Shown here: positions 2,687 to 18,416 of the stretch, piece after piece
How positions within the stretch are numbered: the stretch's first letter is position 1
Layout of the letters: each line of letters opens with the position of its first letter
Source: Wallemia ichthyophaga EXF-994
Taxonomy: Eukaryota > Fungi > Basidiomycota
Assembly (NCBI RefSeq): GCF_000400465.1
Contig: NW_008806307.1
Span: 1 to 18,416 of the forward strand
Reading direction: 5' to 3'
Length of the DNA stretch: 18,416 bases
Notes under the pieces: model-generated
Told to the model about the DNA's origin: nothing
The model's input: the letters and a program-made list of their open reading frames with translations, nothing else
Databases searched by the model: none
Made by a program: the position numbers and the translations under genes

Positions 2687-5600
2687 TCAATCAATCTGCA
2701 TAGCTTCAGAGGAATTATTAGTAGTACTCAAATTTAATTGCGATGAAGCCAAGAAAACGGTCTTAAAAGTAGGGTTTGGCTCGATAACGGTCTTAATAAG
2801 GTTTATGAGCAAGCCATGCTGATTGGTTAGGCTGCTACCATTCAGCGTAGCCATTGTGCGACAAACACTAGATTGCAACTCTGTATTACGCTCATGCTCC
2901 ATCTTGGTAGCGTTATCTTTAGGTTTGTGCTGTAGTGTCTTTTGGAGACATGGGAGGATGTCGTTGAGTGCTGTTGTGTGTCAGAGTTGTCACTTTTACT
3001 CATACTCATATTCATACTCACACTCAGAAACCAAATCTCCACACACGCTAACTAACCTATTCAAAATAAGGTAGCTCAGTATCTTGATCTCATCCACATC
3101 GCCAAGCCCCTTTTTGACCTGCTCTATCAGATCACGAGCGCTCACTAATTCAGAGTGGTTCGACATAGTATAAAGACACTCAAATGCCGTCTTGCGGATT
3201 GGCAGGCCGTCATCAATCGTTTCTTTGAAAGGTCCGAGGGTGATTTGGCGCACGAGTTGAGTGTTTACTGTTGTCTGCGTGAGAAGGTTGTTGATGACAC
3301 CTTCGGAGATGAGCTGTGGCTTGTGTCTCGCAGCTGAGTTGATAGTAGAAAGTGTGATTCTTATTACTTCCAAATTTTGCTGTGCGAGAAGAGCGGTGAA
3401 GGTACTGAAGAGATCGTCGAGCTGTAAACTATTCTCGTGTGGGGCTTCACTAATAGCGTATCTAATAGCAATAACGATAACCAGTTTTTTGTTCTCCTCC
3501 TCACCTTGCAGAACCTGTTTTAAGTGTGGCACGTACGTCTCACTCTTGTAGAGCAACTTAGCAAGACATTCAGCGGCGATGTTGCGCACGTTCTCGTCAT
3601 TAGTACCACACAGAAGTGTATCGAACACAGTGTCCGCATCGTTACTCGATAGCTCCGCACCACTGATAACTTCCTTCAGTGATAGGAGGATGAGGTAGTC
3701 AGGCGCACGGAGTTGATCGAGAAGCTGCGGCAGAAATGTTGAGCTACCGACGCAAATACTTCCGAGCGAACAAGACGATGATCTGCGTACCTTGTCCTCA
3801 CTGTGAGTGAAATACGTCTGGATATCTTTGAACAGATGAGGGTAATTCTGGGACAAGTCGAAGTGTTTGCCAACGTGGCCTACTACTAGAAGAGACAAAT
3901 ATACGTCAGAAATTTGCTGGTTTGGAGATTTTACCAAATTGACAAACTGCTCAACACCACTACCACTACCATTACCACTTTCAACAATTACACCGCCTAT
4001 CAATCTACTGACATTGTCGAGTATATGCTCTCCCTCACCGCCAACATCTTTAAGCTCTTTGTCATCCAATTTCCCGATTTCGTTAAGCAGTCTGGAGATT
4101 ATCTCAGCACTGAGTCCACCATCTCTCGAGGCAACTTGGTAAAATGACTCAAGAGGTTCTATTATAAGCACCGGCGATTTGATAAGTGAGTAGGAACGAT
4201 TGAGTATTTTTAGCACCATTGAACGTATCTCAAGATCATTGCTGCTAAACAACTTGGTAGCCATGTTGAGAGTGTGCGAAAGAGTGTTGATGTCGTTGAT
4301 ATTTACGAGCGGGAGGATGCTATCAACCAATTCAGCTACGACATCTTTACTAATTCTGTCTGCCACTCTCTCGAGGAGTACTTCGAGACATTCAAACGCA
4401 GCCATCTTGATCACTCTGTCGTTTTGTTTGATGAGAGGTGTGATGAGTTTGACGCAGTCTGTGAGCCATTGTGTAAAAATCTCGTTGGTGCATGTGTACC
4501 TGGACGCTGCGACGGACTGTATTGCTTTGATACCGCTGAATCTGTTAAGATTGTTGTACGTTCTATCTTTCAACAAATGCAAGACGTTGGTGTCATTGTC
4601 GGACTGTACCAAAATATTCCCACCATGCGAGAGGAGTACTGAGACCAAGTCTATAGCATCATCCTTGACATTATTCGACAAGTCACTATCTTGAATACGT
4701 TCTGTTGTAGACAAAGCTATCAATTTAATTAGGTCGTTGATCTCAGTCTGCTTGATGGGTGAAGGTGAGCAAAGGCCATCTTCCTTGTTGGGACGGAGGA
4801 GGATGACGAGATTGGAGAGTGACTTGAATGCTAAGGACGACAGCTTGTGGTATTTCGTTAGCTTCGTTGTGTTGATCAATGTGTGTGTGAATGCTGGTAT
4901 GGAGTGTTGAATGGAACGGTATGTATGGGTCTCGAAGAGAGTGTTGAGCAGAGTGAGCACCTCAATTGGGAGACCTGCAATCAGTAAAATGTGAGAATAG
5001 CAATTCAGCGAACGTCATTCACTCACCTGATGAGATTGTAGACTCGACATTGTTTAGACCCTGTTGAATAAGCGGAGCGATTTCATCAATGTATGGGGCT
5101 TGCAAGATGTCAGGCATCGACTGAATGAGCGTGGTGAGTAACTTGTATGAATTCAAGCGAATAATAAGAGATTTGTCGCTCAGGTGCTTAGTGAGGGAGT
5201 TGATGAGTGGAGATTTATAAGTGTTAGACTGTAAATCACACTGAGCTGTGATATCAACATCCATTTCATTGTGTTTGCGTTTGAGAGAAGATTTTTGAGC
5301 AACAGCAGCACTAACGACGAAGAAGGCATTGATGGCGTTGAATAGCTCCAATTTTACACTCTCCTCACGCTCCTTTGAGGTGACGGTGAGGAGATGGATA
5401 AAGAGGGTGGAGTAGAGATGAGAAAGGAGTAATGAATTGCTTGCGATGATGGTGGTGAGGAGTTTGGCAGCAGATTTTCTAACCTTCCAGCTGAGGTCGT
5501 CATTGTCGGAGAGAGGTTCATCCTCCTCGTCCTCGTCATCTTGATCGTCATCTTCATCATCTTCGTCTAAATCAAAGTAGTTTGGATTGTAATTGATGAG

Positions 5601-6437
5601 AGATTGAGAGATTGAGATGAGTTGAGTGATGTGAGATTGAGGGTTGAGGTGGGACACATAGCAGTCTAAAGTTGACAGGGCAGCGTCTTTAATGTCATCA
5701 TCTTGATTGTTCAATTGGTTGATGAGTTGATCAATATGTGTTGGGGTGTTTATGAGATGTAGAGTGTTTTGAATTAGGAGGGTAGTGATGATAAAGTTCG
5801 ATGAGAGATTCTTGTCGATAAAGGTGTTGAGAGTGTCCAAGTGGTTGCTGTTGAGGAGTGTAGTGAGTAAAGAGATGGACTTCTTCTTCATTGAATGTCT
5901 TGAGTTTGATGAAGTGATAAAATTGAATTGGGTTTTGATGAGAATTGAACGTTGATTGTCGTTGATGGGTGTTTTGTTAATGTAAATATGCAAGACATCT
6001 AACAAATCAATTGAAGTTTGTATATCGAGAATGCTTATGATATTGTTAATGAACCAATCGCTATCTAACAAAGCTAGCCGATTAGAATGCTTAATGACAC
6101 CCTTCAAACAAATCAAGTGAATGTCTTTAAGCTCTTGAGTGTTTGAAGCTTTAAGAGTGTCTAACAAGTTTAAGATGAGATGATTCAAACTAACGAATCT
6201 AACTTTATTGACCAATTCAACCAAGACTTTCAAATTGAATTCCTTTATTTCGATATTGTTATCTTCCAATTTATAGATCAACTTATCAACCAATTTGATT
6301 TCCATTTCCTCGCTTAGATTTAAAGTGGGTGATGAAACTAACAAATATAAATCATTTAGCCCCATAAATCTGTGATCTGTATCATTATCTGATAATTTAC
6401 TGAGTAATTGAGTTATTTTGCTGTCGCTGTTATTCAT
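2687..6437 (-). CDS. CAND1: Cullin-associated NEDD8-dissociated protein 1 (TIP120 HEAT-repeat protein), about 1215 aa
   Basis: Exons 6437-5027, 4974-3022, 2970-2687 joined by GT-AG introns of 52 and 51 nt give 3648 nt in frame. Motifs: N-terminal DTDHRFMGLNDL, acidic loop then DDLSWKVRKSAAK, ENVRNIAAECL, C-terminal GPFKETIDDGLPIRKTAFECLY and KMEHERNTEL. Confidence 0.93.
2998..3027. repeat. Five imperfect ACTCAT hexamers across the CAND1 exon 2/intron 2 junction
   Basis: Plus strand ACTCAT ACTCAT ATTCAT ACTCAC ACTCAG; on the coding strand these read as NTGAGT-like units, one of which is the GTGAGT donor at 3021. Confidence 0.7.
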
Positions 6438-6572
6438 CTGTGTGGTGGACTTGGTGGTTTCGATTAGAGAGGGAAGGTGGAATCAGATAGAGATAGTTTT
6501 GATGATAATACAGCTATTGCAGGTCCATTACGAACCCTAAAATCTCTCTATACTTAACTATCATCCCCATAA
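6438..6572. promoter_or_regulatory. Putative bidirectional promoter CAND1/NAS2 (135 bp)
   Basis: Divergent ATGs at 6437 (-) and 6573 (+); function inferred from geometry only. Confidence 0.6.
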
Positions 6573-7167
6573 ATGGAAGATCTCATCAAACACAGAGAGG
6601 CAATCCAATCAAGGCTTAACGAAATATTCGACTACTTTTATGAGAATAAAATTACGAAATCGACAAATCTAGTTGATAACCACGGCTATCCAAGGTCAGA
6701 TTTGGATTTGTATACAATTTCTAATTACAGGAATGAGTTAAGTAGATTGGAGAATGATATGAAAACTGTTAATGAGAAGCTATCAAATCATTTATTACAT
6801 CATCACTCTAAGTACTCGACCCCGTCTCAACCCACAGCGAATCCACCCTCTCATCTGCAACCGTGGTCTGTGATTGATAACATATTAACGGGCAGCTCTT
6901 CTTTTTCTGCTGGATTACATACGAACGATAAAATAATCTCATTTGGTCCTTTCACGCACGTCACCCAAGACAACTTCAATCAGCTGCCACAGTTTATTAA
7001 GAGCAATGGCAATTCTCCTATTGAGGTGTTAATACTTCGAAATGATAACACTCATCTACGTTTCACCATCCATCCGAACGGCAGCTCTCTCGGGTAAGTT
7101 CGGAGCTAATTGTCTCACATTGCTTAATCTCACTCCATTTGTTAGCATGCACATACAGCCACTATAA
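6573..7167 (+). CDS. NAS2: 26S proteasome regulatory-particle assembly chaperone Nas2/PSMD9 (p27), about 180 aa
   Basis: LVDNHGYPRSDLDLY N-terminal motif; PDZ-like AGLHTNDKIISFG. Exon 6573-7093, intron 7094-7145 (GTAAGT..TAG), exon 7146-7167 gives the C-terminus SLGMHIQPL*, matching the family LGCHIxPL-type end. Confidence 0.88.
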
Positions 7168-7292
7168 CTGCGCTATTGTTACACATGTCATCTCATAAAT
7201 TATGTATTTTATCATTTTATCACGCAATCATACAATCATAACATCATCACAATATCACCTTCTCCTATTTGGTTGAATCCCTTTTTACTACC

Positions 7293-7703
7293 ATGATGAC
7301 AGATCTCATTAAGCAGCTACCAACCCACGACGGCACTGGCACTTTCTCCAACGGCGACGACCTCGACCTGTGCAGTTTCACACCCACCTCATTTGATTCA
7401 TCCCTCCCTTCCAATTTGTCCGGCGATTTGTTTGATTTCTTTACAGACGACAGTGATAAGTCACCTCAGTCTAAGCTTGTCAGTGACGTTGTAAGCAGAC
7501 GTAGAAAATCTTCAGCTGCGTCGTTGTGCTCTAGTTGCCAGCAGCATCAATCTCAACTCAGCTCCTCGATATTCGCTCAGAGTGCAGGTTTATACAAGAA
7601 AACAAGTGTTGACTGCACTCACATCGAACCACCCCAGTCGAGCATCGTATCTTATCTCGCATCTTACCTAGTTCTCACTCTTAAATCACTACACCTGATA
7701 TAG
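7293..7703 (+). CDS. Hypothetical Ser/Asp-rich protein, about 136 aa, with hydrophobic C-terminus
   Basis: ORF from ATG 7293 fills the otherwise unexplained 650-bp gap between the NAS2 and Aurora stops; no family recognised. Confidence 0.5.
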   Translation: MMTDLIKQLPTHDGTGTFSNGDDLDLCSFTPTSFDSSLPSNLSGDLFDFFTDDSDKSPQSKLVSDVVSRRRKSSAASLCSSCQQHQSQLSSSIFAQSAGLYKKTSVDCTHIEPPQSSIVSYLASYLVLTLKSLHLI

Positions 7704-7816
7704 CTACATTTTACTAGAGCAAACACTTCAACATGCAATGTTCGCAAAGCAGCCAGCGCAAACCATATAGCACATCACGATAAACGTAACACAATCAATG
7801 TACTACATACACTAAA

Positions 7817-8969
7817 CTATCCAACGACCCCTGTCGATCTCGAAGACTTCTTGTACTTCAATATCCATGGATGCATTTGTACCTTTTCCAACGCCAATCT
7901 TTGGTGGGGCTCATGAACCAGCAACTTGCTGATTAAGTCTGCCGCTTCTGGGGATACGTGTGGTGGTATACTGTAGTCAACCCTACTGATTCGTCTATAT
8001 GTCGCGCTATGTCCTGATTCTTCAAACGGAGGTCCTCCAACGAGGAACTCATACGCCAATACGCCCAGACTCCACAGATCAACTGCCGCCGTGTGTTCCC
8101 TGCCTTCAATCATTTCCGGTGGAAGGTAATCGAGTGTCCCGCACAAAGTCGTCCTTCTATTTCCCGGTGCATGCACCGACCATCCGAAATCACCTATCTT
8201 GAGCTCGCCATTGATCCCCAAGAGCAGATTCTCAGGCTTTATATCTCTGTGTATAACATGCTTGCTGTGTAAATAAAGCAGTGCATCTGCCATTTGCGCT
8301 ATATACCGCGATGACCTCTTATCGCTGAATCTGCCCAGCTTGTTCAGCTGCTTGTAAAGCTCTCCCTTCCCTGCAAACTCTATCATCAGGTATATCCGTT
8401 TTCCGTCATAAAAAAATCCGTATAAACGGAGGATATTAGGATGTCTGGGGTGTGTTAGTTGGCCATCTTTTCAAAACACTCCTTTCCCACCTCATATTAG
8501 CCTGTATTTCGATCTCTCTGCGCAACTGCTTCTCAACGCGCGCCTCTACCAGCTCAGTCTTGTACAGACACTTCAAAGCTACGACGAATGGCGGCTGCGT
8601 GCGCGTACGTGCCATGTACACCCTACCGAATTTACCCTTTCCTAGCGGTCTACCAACGTCGAACATGTTGAGATTCCACGCTTGTCCTCGCAACTGCAAG
8701 TCGAGAATCCTCCCTTTATCTCCACCAGCGCTATCTCCCTTCCTGTCCTCCTCGTCGCGCTCTAAACCACCGTCATACGTACCAATCAAGCTGTCATTGT
8801 TCGCTTTGTGAGTGGTGGTTTGTGTGTTGAGTGTGTTAGCCATCTTTATCAAATTTGGCATGCGATTCACGTCGTTTGGTTTGTATTTCGATGGAAGCTT
8901 TTGAATCTGCTTCGGCTTGTTGTTGTCGCCGAGGCTCAAGCCTTGCATCTGCGAGTGTAGATTGGACAT
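7817..8969 (-). CDS. IPL1: Aurora kinase (Ipl1/Ark1), about 368 aa
   Basis: Exons 8969-8491 and 8444-7817 (46-nt intron). Motifs: [68 protein letters not shown]. Start chosen at [13 protein letters not shown]; an in-frame ATG at 9017 is possible but lies about 10 nt from a TATA-like tract. Confidence 0.95.
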
Positions 8970-9035
8970 CCTTACACTCTCGTGATCGTCGTCGCCTCTA
9001 CAAAGAGAAAGATTCATATCCGGTGATTTATAAAT

Positions 9036-9125
9036 ACGCGACACGAAAAATAAAAATATACATTATATTAATCAGTATGTCAAAAGAAGTACTTTTACGC
9101 GTAACTTTGGCTTTATTCTACGCGT
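9036..9125. promoter_or_regulatory. Cluster of MCB/SCB-like cell-cycle boxes upstream of Aurora kinase
   Basis: ACGCGA 9036-9041, CACGAAA 9042-9048, ACGCGT 9097-9102 and ACGCGT 9120-9125 within an AT-rich 162-bp intergenic gap. Confidence 0.55.
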
Positions 9126-9131
9126 TTTTTT

Positions 9132-11462
9132 CTAATATGCGTCCTATAAGCGCATTGGTTAGTATCTTAATCATCTCTCAGACACCAAACTCACATCGTC
9201 GATATCAGCCTTAGTGGCTTTTTGCTGTGCCGACGCTTGATTTCTATACATATCAGCAACCTGATCTGATGTCGTCGCATCCTCCGCTCCCTTATCGTCT
9301 CTGACTCTGATAAAGCGCGGGAATCTCAAACTGATACCTCTTTCAGAAATCTCACCTGACGCTGCGGTATAAACAGGAGATAGAGATAGATCAGCAGTCA
9401 AAACCTCCCATACAGCCTGGGGCTCAAAGAAAACATCAGGTTTCGCAGTGCCCAATTTATAGTATGATTTAGGCACTGTAATTTCGAGCGGATTGAGGAG
9501 CTTGTAGTGTTGCTCTAGCATCTCTTCACTGAACCCAGTACCGATTTTACATATACTCTGATATGATTCGCTGTCCTCATCGTAGCAAGCGAGGAGATAA
9601 GCACCATAAACATTCGTACGTTTGCCTTTTCCGTGGTAACCACCAATGACGACTAAATCAAGCGAGTCTCCAGCACCTGCTAGATAGTCCTTCTTCAATT
9701 TCAGCCAATTCATCGAACGTTTCGAAGGGGTGTACCAAGCACTTTCACCAAGGTTCAGCTTCACCATCAGTCCCTCGCAGCTGTCTCGCACACTCTCTTC
9801 CAGAAACACACCAATCTCTTCTGTCGACTGCGCTTCCATTGACTTGGCCATAGCGAACTCATCCTCGACCTGGACAAAGTTTTCACTCAAAAGTTTGCGT
9901 CTGTATGTGAGATCTTCATGCAGCAGCGGCTTGTCGTTGAAATAGAGCAGATCGAAAGCAAAGATATGCACCTTGACTGTAATGTCTTCCACCTTTACAT
10001 CTTTGCGCTTACGACGCGTCAGTTCTTGGAAAGGTAATATATTCTTTGTCTGTTTGTCGAAAGCGACAGCCTCACTGTCGATGACAAAATTCTTGACACC
10101 GGGCTTAATAGCGCGTGGAAGTTGCTCGACGAGGTCTGGGTATTTGTTTGACATATCTTCGGAATTACGAGAGAACACCTTCACCTTTCCGTCGTGGTAG
10201 TGTATCTGGGCACGCTCACCATCGTATTTGTATTCGCATGTGAAACTCTTCCCTTCGAATCTATCAAGCACTTCTGAAACTGCTTTAGTAGGCTTGGCCA
10301 GCATAGGTTTGAGTGGTATACCTGGATTGCTTTGTTAGCAGGAGTGATTGATAGCTACCCGTGCTCCCTCACCTGGTGTAAGATGACATCTTTCTTGTAG
10401 ATCATTGATACCGCCATCTAGCAAAGCAGGTACTATCATATCATATGAAGGGAGCTCCGAGTACACCTGCTTCACCACCTCTACACCCTTCTCTAAGTCC
10501 TCCTTCGTAGCTTTCTCATCGCGCGATAACACAATCGCATGAGCCAAACTAACCACCACAGTTCTCTCAGCCAACCCGATACGCAGTTTACCTTCTAGCA
10601 GTCTAATTAGAAACTTTGCTTCGTTCGTGCTGGAGTCACAATTCGTAAGCATTTTCATTATGATACCTATCTTCTTAGTTTGCGATTGATTTCCAGAAGC
10701 CGTTGCAATCTCTTTGAGATTCTTGAACACACTTGGTACATTCAAACCCTTAGCTTTGAACATTGTTGGTTGGTTTTTTCTGGCCAGTTGCGCAACTGTG
10801 CCGAGATCACCAGCCTTCTTGAAGTCCTCTTTGACCTTGGCGGTGGTGCGTCCCGTTGATTCAACTATGGCCTTGATAAGCAAACCCTCCCCAATACCCA
10901 ACTCCAACCCCTCGTAATCTGGACAAAGGCGGTTGAGCGAGAGGTATACCGTCATCAGCAGCTCTGCTGGCTTAGTTAAAATGACGTGTTTGTAGAATTG
11001 CGTCAAGTGGTCCGCAATCTCTAAGCGTTTCGATGTCGATTCGATGTTTGTGAATGTGTCTGCTAGCTGAGCAAATGTGATGGTGTCGTTGAAATTGTTC
11101 GTCTTGGAAGACGCGTTTGATTTGCTACTTGCGGTCGCTGCCACTTCCTCCCTCACTAACCTCTTATCTTCCTTATCCTGCGAAATCTGCTGCTTGGGGA
11201 GGAACATTGGGTGGATTTTCTTCTCCTTCACCTTTTCATCCTTCTCAGCCTTCACAGGAGAGTTCTTCTTGACGCGCTTTACTGTGTTTTCCTTCGCCGA
11301 GCTCTGCTCAGCCTCTGAGGAGGAAGGTGATTCGATTACGCGTTTGTTGCTGAGCATAGTTGTACTGCTATGCTAAAAGTACGTTAGAAAGTCCAATAGA
11401 ATAAACGCCACCCCCACAAATTTAGATATAAGATTTGGCAGTCTCAGTCTCCTCACTATCAT
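9132..11462 (-). CDS. CDC9: ATP-dependent DNA ligase I; about 707 aa from ATG 11357, about 727 aa with predicted upstream presequence exon
   Basis: Active-site EYKYDGER, EGLMVK, WLKLKKDY, LRFPRF. Exons 11462-11418 (predicted), 11372-10373, 10321-9195 and 9143-9132 (DAY*); introns of 45, 51 and 51 nt, each with a CTAAC branch site. Confidence 0.95.
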
Positions 11463-11583
11463 GCACAAAGGTGTTATCTAACATAACTTATAATTAAAAA
11501 TTATATCCAAATAAAGAGAAGCATATCATTTTATTGCGATTGATTAGAGTGGTGATGTTTTTATACTGGAAGTGCTAATGTCC

Positions 11584-13506
11584 TTAGAAGCCCATTCCTG
11601 TTTTAATTGTTAGCAAACAAGACAGCTAATTGAAGCACTCAGTACTCACCTCCCATTCCACCGCCCATGCCGCCCATGCCTGGCATAGGTGGTGCACCAG
11701 CCTTTTCTTCTGGTGCGTCGACGACGGCAGTCTCAGAAGTGAAGAGGAGAGATGCGACACCTGAAGCGTCGATCAATGCCTGCTTAGTAACCTTGACCGG
11801 ATCAAGGATACCCTTTTCGAACATGTTGCAGAATTCATCCTTGCTGGCGTCATAACCCATGTTGAAGTCGTGTGGGTGCTTCTCGAGGACTTGTCCAACA
11901 ATCAATGCACCCTCACCACCGGCGTTTTCGACGATAGTGCGCATTGGACGAGTGAGTGCGTTCTTGACCATCGAAATACCCAATCCTTGGTCGAAGTTGG
12001 CGGCATCTGAGCCCAGCGCGTCACTAGCTCTAAGCAAACCGATACCTCCACCTGGGATGACACCTTCAGCAACAGCAGCGCGAGTTGCGTTGAGTGCATC
12101 GTCGTATCTGTCCTTCTTTTCGCTGACTTCGACTTCTGAAGCGCCACCGACACGGATGACAGCGACACCACCGCTCAACTTGGCAAGACGCTCTTGTAAC
12201 TTGGATCTGTCGTAGTCAGAGGTGCTTGCATCGTTGATGAGAGCTCTAATTTGCTCGCAGCGGTTGGCGACGATTTCACCTTGACCGTCACCGTTGAGGA
12301 CAAGGGTGTCTTCCTTAGTGATGGAGGTGCTACCACATGAACCGAGCATGTCTACGGTGGCCTTCTCGAGCTTGACGTCAAGTTCTTCGGTGAACACGGT
12401 ACCGCCGGTGAGAATGGCAAGATCTCCGAGGATGCTCTTTCTGTTGTCACCGAAACCTGGGGCCTTGATTGCGCAAACTTGAAGCTGACCACGGAGCTTG
12501 TTGAGAATACAAGCAGCAAGAGCTTCACCGTCAATGTCCTCAGCGATGATGATGAGTGGGCGACGAGCAGTGGCAGAAATCTCAAGAGCTGGCATAATGT
12601 CTGGGAGAGCAGAAATCTTCTTTTCGGAAAGAAGGAACAAAGGCTTTTCGAATTCAGCCTTCTGAGACTTAACGTCGGTGATGAAATATGGGGAGATGAA
12701 ACCGCGGTCGAACCTCATGCCTGTGTGGGTTATGTTAGTGAAAGAAGTGTTATAAACAGCTCAAGTCCCACCCTCAGTAATCTCAACTTCATCGTCGATG
12801 GTCTTTCCTTCCTTGACGGTGATGACACCCTCTTTGCCGACCTTTGCCATTGCGTTTGCAATGAGCTGACCAACGTGAACATCACCGTTAGCAGATATAG
12901 TTGCAACTTGAGCAATTTCCTCTGAAGTGGTTACGACTTTCTTGTTAGCCTCGAGAACTTTGATGACTTCTTCAACGGCTTTTTGTACACCACGACGGAG
13001 ATCCATTGGGTTACAGCCAGCAGCGACATTCTTGACACCCTCAGCGTAAATGGCCTTTGCGAGCACAGTGGCGGTGGTTGTACCATCACCTGCAATTTCG
13101 TTTGTCTTGGAAGCAACGTCCTGGACAAGACGAGCACCGAGATTTTCAAACTTGTCTTGGAGGGTGATAGACTTGGCAACGGTGACACCATCTTTTGTAA
13201 TCTTTGGGCCACCAAAGGCTTGTTCGATGATTACGTTGCGTCCTTTTAATTTTATTAGCCAATTTCAGCGAGAACGGCGAATTCAACAGACCCTTTGGAC
13301 CGAGAGTAGATGATACAGCCTTTGTAAGCAAATCAATACCACTGAGCATAGATGCACGTGCATCAACGCCGAATTTGATGTCCTGGTGGCTACGTGAGAG
13401 ATGAGTGAAGATGGCGACGGAGACGCACCTTGTGAGCGCCTCTGGCTAAGACAGAGGGAACTCTTTGGATATTCTTGTGAGCTGCGCGTACTGTTCTTGG
13501 GAGCAT
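11584..13506 (-). CDS. HSP60: Mitochondrial chaperonin Hsp60, about 574 aa
   Basis: Exons 13506-13429, 13382-13292, 13242-12772, 12720-11650 and 11597-11584 give 1725 nt in frame. Arg-rich presequence [11 protein letters not shown]..; [32 protein letters not shown]-repeat tail ending GMGF*. Confidence 0.97.
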
Positions 13507-13568
13507 GATGATGATGGTAGTGGAAAGAGATGGGATTACCCTCTTGAATACACACAACCTTCTAGAAA
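13507..13568. promoter_or_regulatory. 62-bp divergent interval HSP60/ATG3 with heat-shock-element-like site
   Basis: CAAccTTCtaGAA at 13555-13567 is one mismatch from the GAAnnTTCnnGAA HSF consensus. Confidence 0.55.
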
Positions 13569-14820
13569 ATGACGGGAATACAAGGCACGATTCAAGTGAG
13601 TTTGGTGGCTGGGTTGTGGCTTTGCTGACACATAAAGACTCAATTTTGGGCTGTTAGAGATTACCTCGCTCCGGTTAGTATATCGCCTAGCGCTCCTCAG
13701 CCGCTGACTCGAGCAGGTGCTTAGGGAATCAAAATTCAAAGAGCACGGCAGAATTACTCCAGGTGCGTCTCTGCCAGCTGAGCTACTTCCCACTCACACT
13801 CACACCAGATGAATTCGTTGCCGCTGGCGAGTTTCTAACATACAAATTTCCGACGTGGACGTGGTGCAGTGGTGATGAATCGAAGCACAGAGACTATCTG
13901 CCTGCCGATAAGCAATATCTCATCACCAGAAATGTCCCTTCACTTCGCAGAGCCAGGGATATGGCCTTCACAGACAGTCTAGGCGACCCTGATAATGAAG
14001 CTTTCCTGAAATTCGTAAATGATGAGCTTACAGTTGGTGGTGAAGAAGGTGAGGATGACTGGGTTCAGACTCACGCTGGAAACCAATCAAAGGGCGATGT
14101 TCCAGATATCATGCCATCCATTTCGCCCACAAACTCACCCACTATACAACCCTCATCTCCTCAAAAATCTAAAGACAGCCAAGACATTGAGAATATTCAA
14201 GATATCCCTGATATGGAAGACGACGACGATTTTGGTGTGATTGATGAGCCAGATGATCCTGCAGTGGTTGATACGGGCAGCAGTGGCGTGCTCAAGGTGC
14301 GAACGTACGATTGTATTATTACATACGATAAGTACTACCAGACACCGCGTTTGTGGTTACAAGGCTACGATGAGGTGGGTGGTGCTTTTTCATCCAAGAC
14401 AAGGCTAAAACAGAGTAGCACCAAAAGCCTCTCTCATACAACCAAATACTCGAAGACGTTCCATCTGACCACGCCAACAAAACAGTCACCTCAGAACCAT
14501 TCCCCCACTCAGCATCAAACACACCAATGCTTTCTGTTCACCCATGCAAGCACGCGTCAGTGATGAAGAAAATGATAGAAAGGCTGGATACAAAGGCTAA
14601 AGCGGATTCACCGAATACGTCAACTGCCACATCCAAGAAGAAGGGTTGGCTGAGTAGTGTTGTCGGTGGATCGAAAAAGCAACCACAGTCGCAGCAGCTG
14701 CAACAACAGCCCGAGACGGATAGTGAAGATGGATTGCGCGTTGATCAGTATCTCGTAATGTTTTTAAAGTTTATGGCGGGGATACTAACAGTGGAGATAG
14801 ACGCGACGACGTCTTTCTAG
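13569..14820 (+). CDS. ATG3: Autophagy E2-like enzyme Atg3, about 358 aa
   Basis: Exons 13569-13595, 13638-13673, 13717-13762, 13809-14374 and 14419-14820 (introns of 42, 43, 46 and 44 nt) give 1077 nt. Motifs: [44 protein letters not shown], catalytic SVHPCKHA, RVDQYL..FLKF. Confidence 0.95.
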
Positions 14821-14941
14821 GTGAGTAGATTTATCAGTAAATCACAGCTGTTAAATTTAAAATATACCCAACGAGATTTGTATTTTGAATACTTAATTGA
14901 ATTTAACGAATAAACCTTTTTACTTCAAAACGTCATCAGCA

Positions 14942-16291
14942 ATGGACCCATCGATGCCAATTATTGTGCGTTGAACGTGATGGAAATTCCCCACTCATAG
15001 CCATCCTCAGATCGACAACGGTACCGGTTTCGTAAAGACTGGTTACGCAGGCTCTAATTTCCCGGAGCACGTATTCCCCTCAATCATCGGTAGACCAATC
15101 CTCAGAGCAGAGGAGAGAGTCGGCAGCGCTGAGATAAAGGATCTCATGATTGGCGATGAGGCCGAGAAGTACAGAACTTTCCTGCAGGTCACTTCACCTC
15201 TTGAACACGGTGTCATCAAGAACTGGCCTGATATGAAGAATCTCTGGGATTATACCATTTTCGATAAGATGCGTATCGATCCTAGCGGTAGAAAGGTTCT
15301 CCTCACTGAACCTCCAATGAATCCACTCGCCAATAGAGAGAAGATGTGCGAGGTCATGTTTGAAGAATACGGCTTCGATTATGTCTACATTGCTATCCAG
15401 GCTGTTCTCACTCTCTATGCGCAAGGTTTGTTGCTATCTTCAATACAACCATGTCATCTCACCCCGCTCAGGTCTTCAAACTGGCGTCGTCGTCGACTCC
15501 GGTGACGGTGTTACCCACGTTGTCCCCGTCTACGAAGGTTTTGCTCTCCCTCATCTCACTAAGCGTCTCGATGTCGCTGGTCGCGATGTCACCAGATACC
15601 TCATCAAGCTTCTTCTCATGCGTGGATACGCCTTCAACAGAACTGCTGACTTTGAGACAGTTAGAGAGATCAAGGAGAAGCTTTGCTTTACTAGGTGAGC
15701 TATTGGCTCGTTAAGCACCCCAATTAACATGGTATAGTTATGATCTTGAGTCAGACAAGAAGCTCGCCGAGGATACAACCACCCTCGTCGAATCTTACAC
15801 TCTCCCAGATGGCCGTGTTATTAAGGTAGCCAGTGAGCGTTTTGAGGCTCCAGAGTGCATGTTCCAACCGCACCTCGTCGATGTCGAGCAGCCTGGTATC
15901 GCTGAATTACTCTTTAACACCATCCAATCCGCTGCAGTTGACACGAGATCTGAACTCTACAAGCACATTGTTCTTTCCGGTGGTAGCAGTATGTATCCAG
16001 GTCTTCCGTCACGTCTCGAGAAGGAAGTCAAGCAGCTTTACCTCCAAAACGTCGCTGGTGGTAACCCGGATCGCTTAGGCGTAAGTTACTCTCTTCCAGC
16101 TTATAACCCTGCTTACCACTCCCCAACAGAACCTCAAAATTCGTATCGAAGATCCACCACGGAGAAAGCACATGGTTTTCGTTGGTGCTGCTGTTCTTGG
16201 TCAGATCATGGCTCAGCGCACAAACGATTTCTGGGTCTCCAGACAAGAGTGGATGGAAGAGGGTCCTAGAGCGTTGCAAAAGCTTCATTAA
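14942..16291 (+). CDS. ARP2: Actin-related protein 2 (Arp2/3 complex), about 388 aa
   Basis: Exons 14942-14965, 15011-15425, 15472-15694, 15738-16080 and 16130-16291 give 1167 nt. Motifs: [71 protein letters not shown]. Confidence 0.97.
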
Positions 16292-16482
16292 TGCTTCAAA
16301 TATACAATACATGATTCAAACAAGCCGACGCAATGACAATGGATTGTAAAGTTAAAATCTTATACCAATTTTAAGTTCTGTATTGACCTTGCAGGCAGTA
16401 TTAGCCATTCTCAGATGAAAAAATTGAGTTCATAAATCACATTGCTTTTGGCTTCTTTGGGTTTATTGATATGATTGTTCTA

Positions 16483-16511
16483 CATAGGTTAGTTTGCATA
16501 GGTTAGGTTAG
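16483..16511 (+). repeat. Degenerate telomere-like TTAGG units
   Basis: CATAGGTTAG TTTG CATAGGTTAG GTTAG. Confidence 0.7.
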
Positions 16512-16873
16512 CAAGCATTTAATTATTGTCGATACAATTTGTCTTATTTCTAAAATACTTTTTAAAAAAAAAAAGATGAAAAATTTGTGGTAATCCAAAT
16601 GATCGCTTAGAACTCAAAATACGCTGTCCTTGCGCGTATAAGGCCCAATGATAACAGTCTTGTAAGCATTTCATAATGCGGCGTTATCTTTCGCCATTTC
16701 TGAAACACTTCATTCGAAGAATCCGTTACGAAACCCCCCGCAGTGAGAAGAAGCGGAACAAAGGAAGTATCAGTGAGGTCCCCGTACTTGTTGACCTTTT
16801 CACGCTCATAAAACGACAGCTCCATCTTGTACCGACCCAATGGGCCAAGATTCTTGAGGTGGGTCGCTGCCTC
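16512..16873 (-). mobile_element. 5'-truncated RLE-type (CRE-like) non-LTR retrotransposon fragment, family B
   Basis: Frame open from 16873 to TAA 16607: EAATHLKNLGPLGRYKMELSFYEREKVNKYGDLTDTSFVPLLLTAGG..; aligns by eye to the C-terminus of the larger element (KVDKY..FVPLVFSAGG..FKAWR). Flanked by AGGTTAGGTTAG on both sides. Confidence 0.85.
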
Positions 16874-16886
16874 AGGTTAGGTTAGG
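16874..16886 (+). repeat. Short perfect TTAGG tract between the two retroelements
   Basis: AGGTTAGGTTAGG; the first 12 nt are identical to 16500-16511. Confidence 0.8.
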
Positions 16887-18416
16887 TGATAAATGAGATC
16901 TATATGTAAATGACAAAGAAAAACGAAATGTCTGAGAAATTTTCACCGCGTACGCTATCGGACCAAGACATGACCAACGCACTCCACCAGGATAAACACC
17001 ATTGTTAAACCATTAAGAGAACCCTCAATTGACCAGGCGGAAGTTCGTAACCCGTTTTCGAACTAAGGCAAAGGCGATGAGACGTTGAAGGTGATCCCAA
17101 CTTGGGACGATACTCCGCCAAGCCTTGAAGAGGTCCATAGTATGCGCACTCAAGGCACCGCCAGCACTGAAGACAAGTGGCACGAAGTCTAAAGAGACAA
17201 CGTGCCGATACTTGTCCACCTTCTTTGCAGCTTGGTGGCTCAAACCGGCCCGTAACAGCTGCATCCCATCTTTCTGTTGCCAATCCTTAGTAATTGAAGC
17301 GATATAAGGGGCTAAGGCGGAAGCAGAATGGATAGTGATGTCATGCATGGCGTACGCGCCAGCACCGTTAGCGTGGCTGAGGACCAAGTCCATCCTCATC
17401 AAGTTGTGAGGATCCTCTGGAGCTAACTTCTTCTCCGTCGATACAGATACACCTGCCGCCTTGAGATAACTAGCAAGGTGGTCCCGCACCTTATCGTGTC
17501 GCCACGTCTTGATTTGAACTCGGTCACGACAAATGTCATCATGGCCAGGCGTGTTGTGCTGACCACAATGGCAAATGTGTGCCTCGCCAGGACACAGCGT
17601 CCGCAGGTGGAGAAGAGCCTTGAACTCAGAGTTAGTAAAGCGCAGGCCAGGCTCAAATGGTAGAGACGTAAGAGGCTTTCGCCCCAATTTCGTACCATTC
17701 TCCGCCAACTGTAACTTGCCATAAAGGTCAAGCCCATCACTCAGCTCCTTATACCTCACAGCATTCGCCACATCAGTGTACGTTCGCTGCTGGGTGATTG
17801 GGGGCTGATTCAGGTCAGAAGACGGGTGAAGAATGAGCTGTAGCTGCCGTCCAGCTTGCTCAGCCATGGCTTTACGCGCGAAGGGTGCTACACGTGCGTG
17901 CGATACTATACCTAGGCCGCCTTGATATGACGGAAGATGAAAAAGATCTTCGTCCGTGGGTAAGACTCTAGGAGAGCCGCGCAACTCACGAATAGCAGAA
18001 CGGAAGACATCGTCTACCCGGTGCCATTCATCCCCAGCGTCACTGAGGTCCAACGAGCGCTGGAGGTGTCGAAGCGATGCTTGAAATGACTTTGATAACA
18101 GAAGCCACGCATACTGAGTCCGCACAAGTCGTAAACGACTGAGCTTACGCTTGACTACCTCCAATTGTCTACGAAGGAACCCCACACGCACGTGCCTAGG
18201 ACCCACCACTGTACCTAGCAACTCCATCCCCTCAGTGCGTATATCATCCACCGATTTCGATAAACATTTATCTTTATTCAACTTGATCGAAAGGTTCAAC
18301 GAATCAAGAGAAGAAAAGACGTCCTGTTGAATATCGGTATTGGATAAGACATACACATCATCCAAATAGGAAAGCACTAAACCTTTATCACCTATTGTTA
18401 AGGTTTGGGTTTGTCT
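16887..18416 (-). mobile_element. RLE-type (CRE-like) non-LTR retrotransposon, family A, 5' part beyond the window
   Basis: Uninterrupted RT/Zn-knuckle/RLE ORF, then a 138-nt 3' UTR ending directly at CCTAACCTAACCT with no poly(A). Confidence 0.9.
17025..18416 (-). CDS. Reverse transcriptase + CCHC zinc knuckle + restriction-like endonuclease (partial, 463 codons in window)
   Basis: Frame stays open to the window edge (RQTQTLTIGDKGLVLSYLDDVYVL). Motifs: YLDD catalytic motif, LFHLPSYQGGLGI, CHCGQHNTPGHDDIC, RHDKV, RMDLV, HDITI, KKVDKY, FVPLVFSAGG. Confidence 0.93.
   Translation of the reverse strand, partial: RQTQTLTIGDKGLVLSYLDDVYVLSNTDIQQDVFSSLDSLNLSIKLNKDKCLSKSVDDIRTEGMELLGTVVGPRHVRVGFLRRQLEVVKRKLSRLRLVRTQYAWLLLSKSFQASLRHLQRSLDLSDAGDEWHRVDDVFRSAIRELRGSPRVLPTDEDLFHLPSYQGGLGIVSHARVAPFARKAMAEQAGRQLQLILHPSSDLNQPPITQQRTYTDVANAVRYKELSDGLDLYGKLQLAENGTKLGRKPLTSLPFEPGLRFTNSEFKALLHLRTLCPGEAHICHCGQHNTPGHDDICRDRVQIKTWRHDKVRDHLASYLKAAGVSVSTEKKLAPEDPHNLMRMDLVLSHANGAGAYAMHDITIHSASALAPYIASITKDWQQKDGMQLLRAGLSHQAAKKVDKYRHVVSLDFVPLVFSAGGALSAHTMDLFKAWRSIVPSWDHLQRLIAFALVRKRVTNFRLVN

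What the first reader, a model, noticed from the sequence alone, without database searches (positions are those of the whole stretch)
16500..16885. 362-bp truncated element bracketed by an exact 12-bp direct repeat, with the reading frame cut precisely at the repeat
Seen: AGGTTAGGTTAG at 16500-16511 and 16874-16885 brackets the fragment; the ORF frame is open right up to 16873 and has no internal stop. Inference: either a target-site duplication from an abortive, 5'-truncated target-primed reverse transcription event, or a truncated cDNA capped de novo by telomerase before element A was added. The clean frame suggests a recent event and an active full-length family B elsewhere.
Basis: partly seen in the sequence, partly recalled or inferred. 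Interest (0 to 1): 0.7.

Follow-up and report, generated by a model that had tools for sequence, protein, structure and literature searches.

The report
Truncated telomere retrotransposon copy in Wallemia
The 362-bp piece is the tail end of a jumping gene that targets chromosome tips in the salt-loving fungus Wallemia, and the 12-bp "direct repeat" around it is two short stretches of the fungus's own TTAGG telomere repeat, an ordinary arrangement for this kind of element.

Summary
AGGTTAGGTTAG occurs only at 16500-16511 and 16874-16885. Between the two copies, on the minus strand, lie the last 88 codons and a 95-nt 3' UTR of a retrotransposon ORF.

The 12-mer is telomere repeat. Wallemia chromosomes end in (TTAGG)n. 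The window is a chromosome end of Wallemia ichthyophaga or a very close relative. Its order is: last host gene, short telomere tract, 5'-truncated element B, short telomere tract, element A, which runs to the window end.

A and B belong to a family with zinc fingers, a reverse transcriptase and a C-terminal R2-type restriction-like endonuclease. Other W. ichthyophaga contigs carry the same head-to-tail arrays of 5'-truncated copies. Their tracts are 6-14 nt, and every 3' junction sits in the same repeat phase.

Two short tracts in one phase share a 12-mer almost automatically, so the exact repeat says little. A related lineage reads AGGTTAGGTGAA at the left site.

The data do not decide between a target-site duplication and telomerase capping followed by addition of A. 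No full-length B was found.

This is an undescribed Wallemia member of the MoTeR/FoTeR/Cnl1 kind. Interest is modest.

The parts
15146..16269 (+). Last host gene before the chromosome end. It is an actin-related protein with several exons.
   Evidence: Pfam Actin hits on two exon ORFs. The gene is syntenic with the Atg3-Actin gene pair in W. mellicola.
16484..16499 (+). Degenerate telomere-like seed (ATAGGTTAG TTTGCA T) at the boundary between unique DNA and the array.
   Evidence: Read directly. It is identical in L003 and L008. Detectable similarity to W. mellicola stops near 16371.
16500..16511 (+). Interstitial telomere tract T1, AGGTTAGGTTAG. Its 3'-OH end (...TTAG) is the inferred primer for the B cDNA.
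   Evidence: The sister lineage has AGGTTAGGTGAA here.
16512..16606 (-). 3' UTR of element B. It ends ...AATTGTATCGACAATAATTAAATGCTTG. This copy lacks the canonical terminal TTCA.
   Evidence: The last ~28-47 nt are conserved in all B-type copies from other contigs (alignment A3).
16607..16873 (-). Coding remnant of element B: 88 codons plus the stop. It is the C-terminal tail of the endonuclease domain, downstream of the D/E motif, and includes the conserved K motif.
   Evidence: Translation. It is 36% identical to the C-terminus of A (E 8e-16) and 64% identical to W. ichthyophaga EXF-994 protein P0070. Alignment A2.
16874..16885 (+). Interstitial telomere tract T2, AGGTTAGGTTAG. The telomeric match extends to 16887. 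It joins the truncated 5' end of B to the 3' end of A.
   Evidence: The A 3' end ...CATTTATCAC followed by CTAACCT is confirmed in another strain (L011).
16886..17024 (-). 3' UTR of element A.
   Evidence: It is 99% identical to L001 and L011 from other W. ichthyophaga strains.
17025..18416 (-). ORF of element A, open to the window end (463 codons plus the stop). It contains the YLDD reverse-transcriptase motif, a thumb/linker region, a CCHC motif and a restriction-like endonuclease domain.
   Evidence: There are 547 relatives, and the full-length ones carry RVT_1. The family profile matches R2 proteins in both the RT and the endonuclease domain.

Best explanation
The window is the end of a Wallemia chromosome, most likely W. 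ichthyophaga. The G-rich telomere strand, TTAGG, is the + strand and points right.

The 362-bp piece is the 3' end of a telomere-repeat-targeting non-LTR retrotransposon, family B. The copy was made by target-primed reverse transcription. A 3'-OH on the G-strand ending in ...TTAG primed cDNA synthesis on the 3' end of the element RNA. The copy now stops 362 nt in.

Distal to it is a second short TTAGG tract. That tract primed the next element, family A, in the same way.

The two 12-mers are therefore two short interstitial telomere tracts, AGG(TTAGG)TTAG. They are not a diagnostic target-site duplication.

Shown by the data: the identity of the repeat, the family, the orientation, the constant 3'-junction phase, and the recurrence of the same architecture at other chromosome ends.

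Inferred: the order of events. I slightly favour this sequence. B arrived first. Its truncated 5' end then acquired TTAGG repeats by telomerase, either after abortive reverse transcription at the end or after erosion of a longer copy. A was then primed from that new tract. Only short tracts survive because longer interstitial telomere tracts are fragile.

Insertion of B into a pre-existing 12-13 nt tract, with a 12-nt duplication, remains a serious alternative.
For: TTAGG is the genuine Wallemia telomere. (TTAGG)11-12 runs to the ends of W. mellicola scaffolds L004 and L006. In L006 the repeats heal a 4.6-kb terminal deletion directly.

Host identity. Atg3 is 76% identical to W. mellicola. Element A is 99% identical to proteins and contigs named W. 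ichthyophaga.

Family. The full-length relatives share N-terminal zinc fingers, RVT_1, and invariant C..C..H..C, RH, E, R.D, D and K columns. The best solved-structure matches are R2 proteins (E 8e-28). A separate match covers the R2 endonuclease domain (i-E 2.6e-4).

Architecture. L001, L002 (a scaffold end in EXF-994) and L007 (a contig end) carry head-to-tail 5'-truncated copies of three families. One copy is only 28-30 nt long. The copies are separated by 6-14 nt of telomere repeat.

Junction phase. All 11 3' junctions, 10 tabulated plus L011, have the G-strand ending ...TTAG before caagc or ...TTAGGT before ga. This shows phase-specific priming.

Literature for the analogous systems. In Magnaporthe, stable MoTeR junctions have at most 2 repeats, longer tracts break, and truncated MoTeRs are healed by de novo telomere addition (PMC7367193). 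For FoTeRs, flanking telomere repeats cannot be scored as target-site duplications (PMC12857005). Cnl1 forms subtelomeric arrays with many 5'-truncated copies (10.1101/2022.06.10.495668).
Against: The order of events is not shown. The 12/12 identity is what a target-site duplication predicts. Two other innermost fragments are flanked by 9-nt direct repeats that include 2-3 non-telomeric bases: TCAGGTTAG on both sides in L007, and TCTGGTTAG/TCAGGTTAG in L002.

No terminal (TTAGG)n array is seen distal to A, because the window ends inside A. The position at the very chromosome tip is therefore inferred from orientation and from the related loci.

In A, the glutamate of the endonuclease E-motif is displaced by two residues (LAPE versus LEP). 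The activity of this particular copy is uncertain.

Placement of the family within the CRE/MoTeR clade was not tested by phylogeny.
Confidence: 0.85

Rival explanations
1. True target-site duplication. A was already attached to unique DNA through one 12-13 nt tract. The element endonuclease nicked the G-strand at TTAG^G next to A. B was reverse-transcribed for only 362 nt. A second nick 12 nt proximal on the C-strand led to fill-in that duplicated AGGTTAGGTTAG. On this reading B is younger than A, and arrays grow from the inside.
For: The 12/12 repeat is exact. In L007 a 28-30 nt B-type fragment is flanked on both sides by TCAGGTTAG, where TC is not telomeric. L002 copy c4 is flanked by TCTGGTTAG and TCAGGTTAG. 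All three are innermost copies, with duplications of similar size (9-12 nt). The family carries a conserved endonuclease domain.
Against: Tracts have the form AGG(TTAGG)0-1TTAG in most junctions, so two flanking tracts are identical about half the time without any duplication. TC precedes the tract in 5 of 9 W. ichthyophaga junctions, including the window's T2. There the proximal flank is AT, so TC looks like a general feature of tract starts rather than copied target. The sister lineage has TGAA in place of the last TTAG of the left copy. A 13-nt target is short for an R2-type DNA-binding module (general knowledge, not tested).
Confidence: 0.3
2. The array is a product of recombination or template switching, not of two separate insertions here. 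One route is break-induced replication that copied a B-tract-A block from another chromosome end. Another is a single reverse-transcription run that jumped from a short B RNA to the telomere-tailed 3' end of an A RNA.
For: MoTeR arrays are extended and contracted by break-induced replication and D-loop copying, which gives identical interstitial tracts (PMC7367193). Tract lengths are quantised and recur between loci. The string GCTTGCTAACCTGA occurs in both L002 and L007. R2-type reverse transcriptases can jump between templates (general knowledge).
Against: No second copy of the B(362)-tract-A junction was found in any fetched contig. L001 joins a B-type 3' end to A at a different point. B of this subfamily was found nowhere else.
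Confidence: 0.12
3. Assembly artefact: the short telomere tracts caused unrelated repeat contigs to be joined wrongly to this unique region.
For: The elements are multi-copy. In short-read assemblies they break into 0.6-1.3 kb contigs. Three Logan contigs all stop 17 nt into B.
Against: The left junction is reproduced in two independent read sets (L003, L008). The tracts are only 12 nt, shorter than any assembly k-mer, so they cannot by themselves create a join. The same architecture is seen in several independent assemblies.
Confidence: 0.03

Closest known systems
MoTeR1/MoTeR2 of Magnaporthe (Pyricularia) oryzae and FoTeRs of Fusarium oxysporum: fungal telomere-targeted non-LTR retrotransposons with a restriction-like endonuclease.
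   Same: Single ORF with a reverse transcriptase and a C-terminal CCHC plus restriction-like endonuclease. A fits the published pattern C-X1-3-C-X7-8-H-X3-4-C-X9-10-RHD ... E ... R.D ... D/E, apart from a two-residue shift of the E-motif glutamate and a 15-residue (versus 12-14) spacer before the last acidic residue. Fixed orientation, with the 3' end toward the centromere and abutting telomere repeat. Head-to-tail arrays. 5'-truncated copies that keep telomere repeat at the 3' end. Short interstitial tracts (versus 56, 72).
   Different: The host is a basidiomycete (Wallemiomycetes) with a 5-nt TTAGG repeat, not TTAGGG. At least three diverged families (A, B-type, C) coexist in one array. The variant 5' repeats typical of full-length MoTeRs could not be checked, because no full-length copy is in hand. 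The R.D motif is RMD/RTD rather than RAD. Clade membership was not tested by phylogeny.
Cnl1 of Cryptococcus neoformans/deneoformans.
   Same: A basidiomycete non-LTR element confined to subtelomeres. It forms tandem or nested arrays with many 5'-truncated copies attributed to abortive target-primed reverse transcription. The FoTeR paper groups it with MoTeR and CRE/SLACS.
   Different: No Cnl1 sequence was available here for comparison. The Cryptococcus telomere repeat differs. Cnl1 is reported to insert into itself, whereas the Wallemia copies are separated by clean telomere tracts.
R2 elements (R2Bm, R2Tg and others; solved structures 9nl3, 9dou, 8gh6).
   Same: Best solved-structure matches to the family profile, in both the reverse transcriptase (E 8e-28) and the C-terminal CCHC/endonuclease domain. 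N-terminal zinc fingers. Site-specific target-primed reverse transcription.
   Different: R2 targets 28S rDNA, not telomeres. Identity is low and limited to domain cores.
TRAS1/SART1 of Bombyx mori.
   Same: Non-LTR retrotransposons specific for (TTAGG)n telomere repeats, inserted in a fixed orientation, with frequent 5' truncation (general knowledge, not tested here).
   Different: They use an N-terminal APE-type endonuclease and have poly(A) tails. They sit within long TTAGG arrays and belong to a different clade (R1). The Wallemia elements have a C-terminal restriction-like endonuclease and no poly(A).
Endonuclease-deficient Penelope-like elements (Athena, Coprina) at telomeres.
   Same: The 3' end faces the centromere. 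Short telomere repeats lie between stacked 5'-truncated copies. Priming from the G-strand end is proposed (general knowledge).
   Different: The reverse transcriptase type is different, and those elements have no endonuclease. The Wallemia family keeps a conserved endonuclease domain.

Membership tests
Non-LTR retrotransposons with a restriction-like endonuclease (R2/CRE/NeSL-type) | Reverse transcriptase domain with the Y/F-x-DD motif | tested here: met
   A reads LSYLDDVYVL at the window end. RVT_1 was found in 6 of 7 full-length relatives scanned. The family profile matches R2 and LINE-1 reverse transcriptases.
Non-LTR retrotransposons with a restriction-like endonuclease (R2/CRE/NeSL-type) | C-terminal CCHC motif followed by RH(D/N/E) ... 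E ... (R/K)xD ... D/E ... K endonuclease motifs | tested here: met
   Invariant C822, C825, H833, C837, H848, E870, D881 and D898 in 27 full-length relatives. A has C-H-C-X7-H-X3-C-X9-RHD ... RMD ... D ... K. The profile aligns to the R2 endonuclease domain with i-E 2.6e-4. In A itself the E-motif glutamate is shifted by two residues.
Non-LTR retrotransposons with a restriction-like endonuclease (R2/CRE/NeSL-type) | N-terminal zinc-finger DNA-binding region | tested here: met
   The relatives share the N-terminal consensus CPxC...HxRxxH and CxCG...H...C. This is not visible for A or B themselves, because both are cut.
Telomere-targeted elements (MoTeR/FoTeR/Cnl1 kind) | Location at chromosome ends, fixed orientation, telomere repeat at the 3' junction | tested here: met
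   The window, L002 (first 4.1 kb of a 337-kb scaffold) and L007 (end of a 74-kb contig) all show this. All 11 3' junctions abut TTAGG-phase repeat on the G-strand. No copies were found in the W. mellicola loci.
Telomere-targeted elements (MoTeR/FoTeR/Cnl1 kind) | Phylogenetic placement of the RT and endonuclease domains inside the CRE/SLACS/MoTeR/Cnl1 clade | not tested
   No reference sequences of MoTeR1, FoTeR, Cnl1, CRE or SLACS could be fetched with these tools. Only R2 was available, through the solved structures.
Telomere-targeted elements (MoTeR/FoTeR/Cnl1 kind) | Variant telomere-like repeats at the 5' end of full-length copies (a MoTeR feature) | not testable with these tools
   No full-length Wallemia copy was found in any fetched contig.
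Classical target-site duplication | Flanking direct repeat derived from one target copy, with an empty allele carrying a single copy | tested here: inconclusive
   The 12/12 repeat is present, but it is made of telomere units. No empty allele is accessible. The sister lineage differs at 2 of 12 positions on the left copy. Two other loci have 9-nt flanking repeats that include non-telomeric bases.

The most novel reading that the evidence does not exclude
These Wallemia elements can use a telomere tract as short as 12-13 nt, buried between unique DNA and an older element, as a complete target. The endonuclease nicks TTAG^G, and a second nick 9-12 nt proximal, sometimes in unique DNA, gives a real target-site duplication. 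Arrays then grow from the inside, with the youngest copy innermost. This would be one of the few cases where a duplication can be demonstrated for a telomere-specific retrotransposon, because the duplicated segment includes non-telomeric bases (TCAGGTTAG in L007).
Probability: 0.3. Interest if true: 0.55.

Novelty: new member of a known kind. Interest (0 to 1): 0.33.

Why it matters
The finding extends telomere-targeted, endonuclease-bearing non-LTR retrotransposons to an early-branching basidiomycete lineage, Wallemiomycetes. These elements were so far described in Magnaporthe, Fusarium and Cryptococcus.

Wallemia has a very compact genome and a 5-nt TTAGG telomere, and several diverged families share the same chromosome ends. 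The very short, phase-constant tracts and the micro-insertions of about 30 nt are convenient natural material. They bear on how such elements choose the nick site and how their 5' junctions are made.

The finding also matters for annotation. At least one W. ichthyophaga reference protein (EOR00096.1) is a gene model spliced across two truncated copies and a telomere tract.

The specific feature that was flagged, the exact 12-mer, is not remarkable in itself.

Tried and rejected
- Pfam and a single-sequence search of solved structures with A's 450-aa ORF and with B gave nothing. The domain assignment needed a profile of full-length relatives.
- Search for a full-length B. I used a padded query: 930 residues of relative P0002 followed by the 88 residues of B, scoring only the B part so that long proteins were eligible. 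It found nothing. The 88-aa piece alone also found nothing among proteins of 48-154 aa.
- Exact look-ups of window ORFs found nothing: CAND1 exon, B from its internal ATG, and A from MAEQ....
- An exact-pattern scan of metagenome contigs for the conserved B 3' end gave no hit.
- RNA folding of the 3' UTRs of A and of three B-type copies showed no structure more stable than shuffles, with z from -0.03 to +2.1. I make no claim of a 3' recognition hairpin.
- A 21-nt similarity between 16413-16433 and 16574-16594 is not in register with the junctions, and I treat it as chance.
- An 11-nt inverted match, TAGGTGATAAA at 16883-16893 (+) and 18384-18394 (-), is within chance expectation for this window. 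I did not use it.
- A prokaryotic or phage reading was rejected. The window holds spliced fungal housekeeping genes syntenic with W. mellicola.
- An arthropod origin, suggested by TTAGG, was rejected for the same reason.

Full report
**1. The observation**

AGGTTAGGTTAG occurs at 16500-16511 and 16874-16885 and nowhere else in the window. Two hundred shuffles gave none. The 362 bp between the copies, read on the minus strand, give 88 sense codons (16873 down to 16610), a stop at 16607-16609 and a 95-nt untranslated tail.

**2. The window**

Most of the window consists of ordinary spliced fungal genes: CAND1/TIP120, Nas2, an aurora-type kinase, DNA ligase I, mitochondrial HSP60, Atg3 and an actin-related protein. 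Atg3 is 76% identical to Wallemia mellicola CBS 633.66, and gene order is conserved with that species.

A Logan contig (L003) is 99.55% identical to window 3961-16528.

The retroelement ORF at the right end, element A, is 99% identical to proteins and contigs that NCBI names Wallemia ichthyophaga. The window is therefore from W. ichthyophaga or something very close to it.

**3. The 12-mer is telomere repeat**

Two W. mellicola records for the syntenic arm end in (TTAGG)11-12, running 5' to 3' toward the record end (L004 18281-18339, L006 13618-13677). In L006 the repeats sit directly on a breakpoint that is internal in L004. This is a 4.6-kb terminal deletion healed by telomere addition.

So TTAGG is the Wallemia telomere unit. 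The + strand of the window is the G-strand, and the chromosome end lies to the right.

Left of 16500 there is a degenerate seed, ATAGGTTAG TTTGCA T. It starts only about 215 bp after the stop of the last gene.

**4. The elements**

Element A (minus strand, 16886 to the window end) has an ORF open to position 18416. The ORF carries LSYLDD and then C-H-C-X7-H-X3-C-X9-RHD ... RMD ... D ... K.

A search of 1.8 billion representative proteins found 547 relatives. The full-length ones are 1000-1300 aa. Six of seven scanned carry RVT_1. An alignment of 27 full-length relatives shows N-terminal zinc-finger motifs and invariant CCHC, RH, E, R.D and D columns.

The profile's best solved-structure matches are R2 retrotransposon proteins (E 8e-28). 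A separate segment aligns the CCHC/endonuclease domain to that of R2 (i-E 2.6e-4). The motif spacing fits the pattern published for MoTeR, FoTeR, SLACS and CRE (PMC12857005). The exceptions in A are a 15-residue spacer before the last acidic residue (12-14 in the published pattern) and a displaced E-motif glutamate.

The 88 residues of B align to the extreme C-terminus of this family. They are 36% identical to A (E 8e-16) and 64% identical to W. ichthyophaga EXF-994 protein P0070. They start between the D/E motif and the K motif of the endonuclease.

Relatives read straight through the position where B is cut. The right 12-mer is therefore a junction and not part of the element.

**5. The same architecture elsewhere**

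L002 is the first 4.1 kb of a 337-kb EXF-994 scaffold. It holds four head-to-tail 5'-truncated copies. L007 is the end of a 74-kb contig of another strain. It holds a B-type 3' end, a 5'-truncated copy of a third family (C) and a 28-30 nt B-type 3' fragment, followed by unique DNA. L001 joins a B-type 3' end to a 5'-truncated A. L011 confirms the 3' end of A...CATTTATCAC followed by CTAACCT.

In G-strand orientation, the perfect telomeric stretches at the junctions are 6-14 nt. Every 3' junction has the repeat ending ...TTAG before caagc or ...TTAGGT before ga. Ten of these are tabulated, and L011 is the eleventh. Such a constant phase is expected if reverse transcription is primed from a defined nick or a base-paired G-strand end.

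B-type copies whose ORFs are only about 65-75% identical still share the last ~28 nt, AATTGTATCGACAATAATTAAATGCTTG. This is followed by TTCA in 6 of 9 copies or CTAA in 3 of 9. The window copy is of the CTAA form.

**6. What the exact 12-mer does and does not show**

Most tracts have the form AGG(TTAGG)0-1TTAG. Two tracts flanking one element are therefore identical about half the time with no duplication at all.

Two independent read sets from a lineage 0.4-0.45% diverged (L003, L008) show AGGTTAGGTGAA at the left site. There the last four bases are the antisense of the element's canonical TTCA end. The two alleles differ only in whether the unit next to GCTTG is TTCAC or CTAAC.

I cannot tell whether this reflects independent insertions one repeat unit apart or a templated change. 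Either way, the left 12-mer is not a fixed copy of a target.

**7. Target-site duplication or capping**

Three points favour a duplication:
- The window repeat is exact.
- In L007 the 28-30 nt fragment is flanked by TCAGGTTAG on both sides.
- In L002, copy c4 is flanked by TCTGGTTAG and TCAGGTTAG. Both of these repeats include non-telomeric bases.

Three points count against using that as proof:
- TC precedes the tract in 5 of 9 W. ichthyophaga junctions. That includes the window's right tract, whose left counterpart is preceded by AT. TC may therefore be a general feature of how tracts start.
- De novo telomere addition demonstrably occurs on this arm in Wallemia.
- In the best-studied analogue, MoTeR, 5'-truncated copies capped by telomere repeat arise by terminal truncation and healing, and only junctions with at most two repeats are stable (PMC7367193). 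The FoTeR authors explicitly decline to score flanking telomere repeats as duplications.

My weights for the order of events are: about 0.45 for B first, then telomere repeats on its 5' end, then A; about 0.3 for a true duplication; the remainder for recombination or template switching. The identity of the feature does not depend on this choice.

**8.

A clean 88-codon frame is weak evidence of youth. Roughly one substitution in twenty creates a stop, so about 8% neutral divergence would be needed before one is expected (my estimate). A B-type 3' end already occupies this site in the diverged lineage.

No full-length B, and no other copy of this B subfamily, was found. This negative result is weak, because telomeric repeats assemble poorly. 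Element A fragments in five strains sit on contigs of 0.66-1.3 kb.

**9. Novelty**

I found no paper in the searchable library that links Wallemia with telomeric retrotransposons or with TTAGG telomeres.

The kind of element is well known: MoTeR, FoTeR, Cnl1 and, more distantly, R2, CRE and SLACS. TRAS and SART are functional analogues on TTAGG repeats. This is a new member of a known kind, and the flagged 12-mer is an expected by-product of its architecture.

Noticed in passing
L004 18281-18339; L006 13618-13677: Wallemia telomeres are (TTAGG)n, the 5-nt unit usually associated with arthropods, not the TTAGGG typical of fungi. I found no paper in the library stating this for Wallemia.
   Followed up: partly
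L006 about 13617, versus L004 about 13750: One W. mellicola strain has lost about 4.6 kb of this chromosome arm, including three annotated genes, relative to CBS 633.66. The break is healed by TTAGG repeats added directly at ...CTTCTGGG(A).
   Followed up: yes
window 16509 and 16511: A two-base difference (TTAG versus TGAA) lies exactly at the B 3' junction, between the window and two Logan assemblies of a 0.4-0.45% diverged lineage. The two alleles are the two recurrent junction forms seen across all B-type copies.
   Followed up: partly
window 16872-16873; L002 3819-3820 and 4136-4138; L007 1504-1505 and 1540-1541: Five of nine interstitial tracts begin, on the G-strand, with TC before AGG or TGG. 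This is either duplicated target that includes non-telomeric bases or a variant first repeat, TCAGG. It remains unexplained.
   Followed up: partly
L007 1504-1533: A retrotransposon copy only 28-30 nt long, the extreme 3' end of a B-type element, sits between two telomere tracts. It shows how short abortive copies can be.
   Followed up: yes
window 18396-18416 (minus strand); L002 4301-4321: The last 21 nt of the window (AGACAAACCCAAACCTTAACA) match 20 of 21 bases of a site about 170 nt proximal of the array on another W. ichthyophaga scaffold. A strain E3P80 contig of element A starts at the window-equivalent position 18381. A may be 5'-truncated near 18381-18395 and joined to something else, although protein similarity to relatives seems to reach about 18395.
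   Followed up: partly
L002 161-1245: The annotated W. ichthyophaga EXF-994 protein J056_000982 (EOR00096.1, here P0070) is an artefactual gene model. Its 'intron' removes the 3' end of one truncated copy, the telomere tract and the start of the next copy.
   Followed up: yes
window about 17330-17350 (minus strand); A2 columns about 1140-1150: In element A the conserved glutamate of the endonuclease E-motif (LEP in relatives) is replaced by LAPE, which shifts the glutamate by two residues. This copy may or may not encode an active nuclease.
   Followed up: no
window 16270-16499: The last host gene stops only about 215 bp from the first telomere-like bases, so this chromosome end has almost no subtelomere. 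In W. mellicola CBS 633.66 the same arm continues for 5.6 kb and three more genes.
   Followed up: partly
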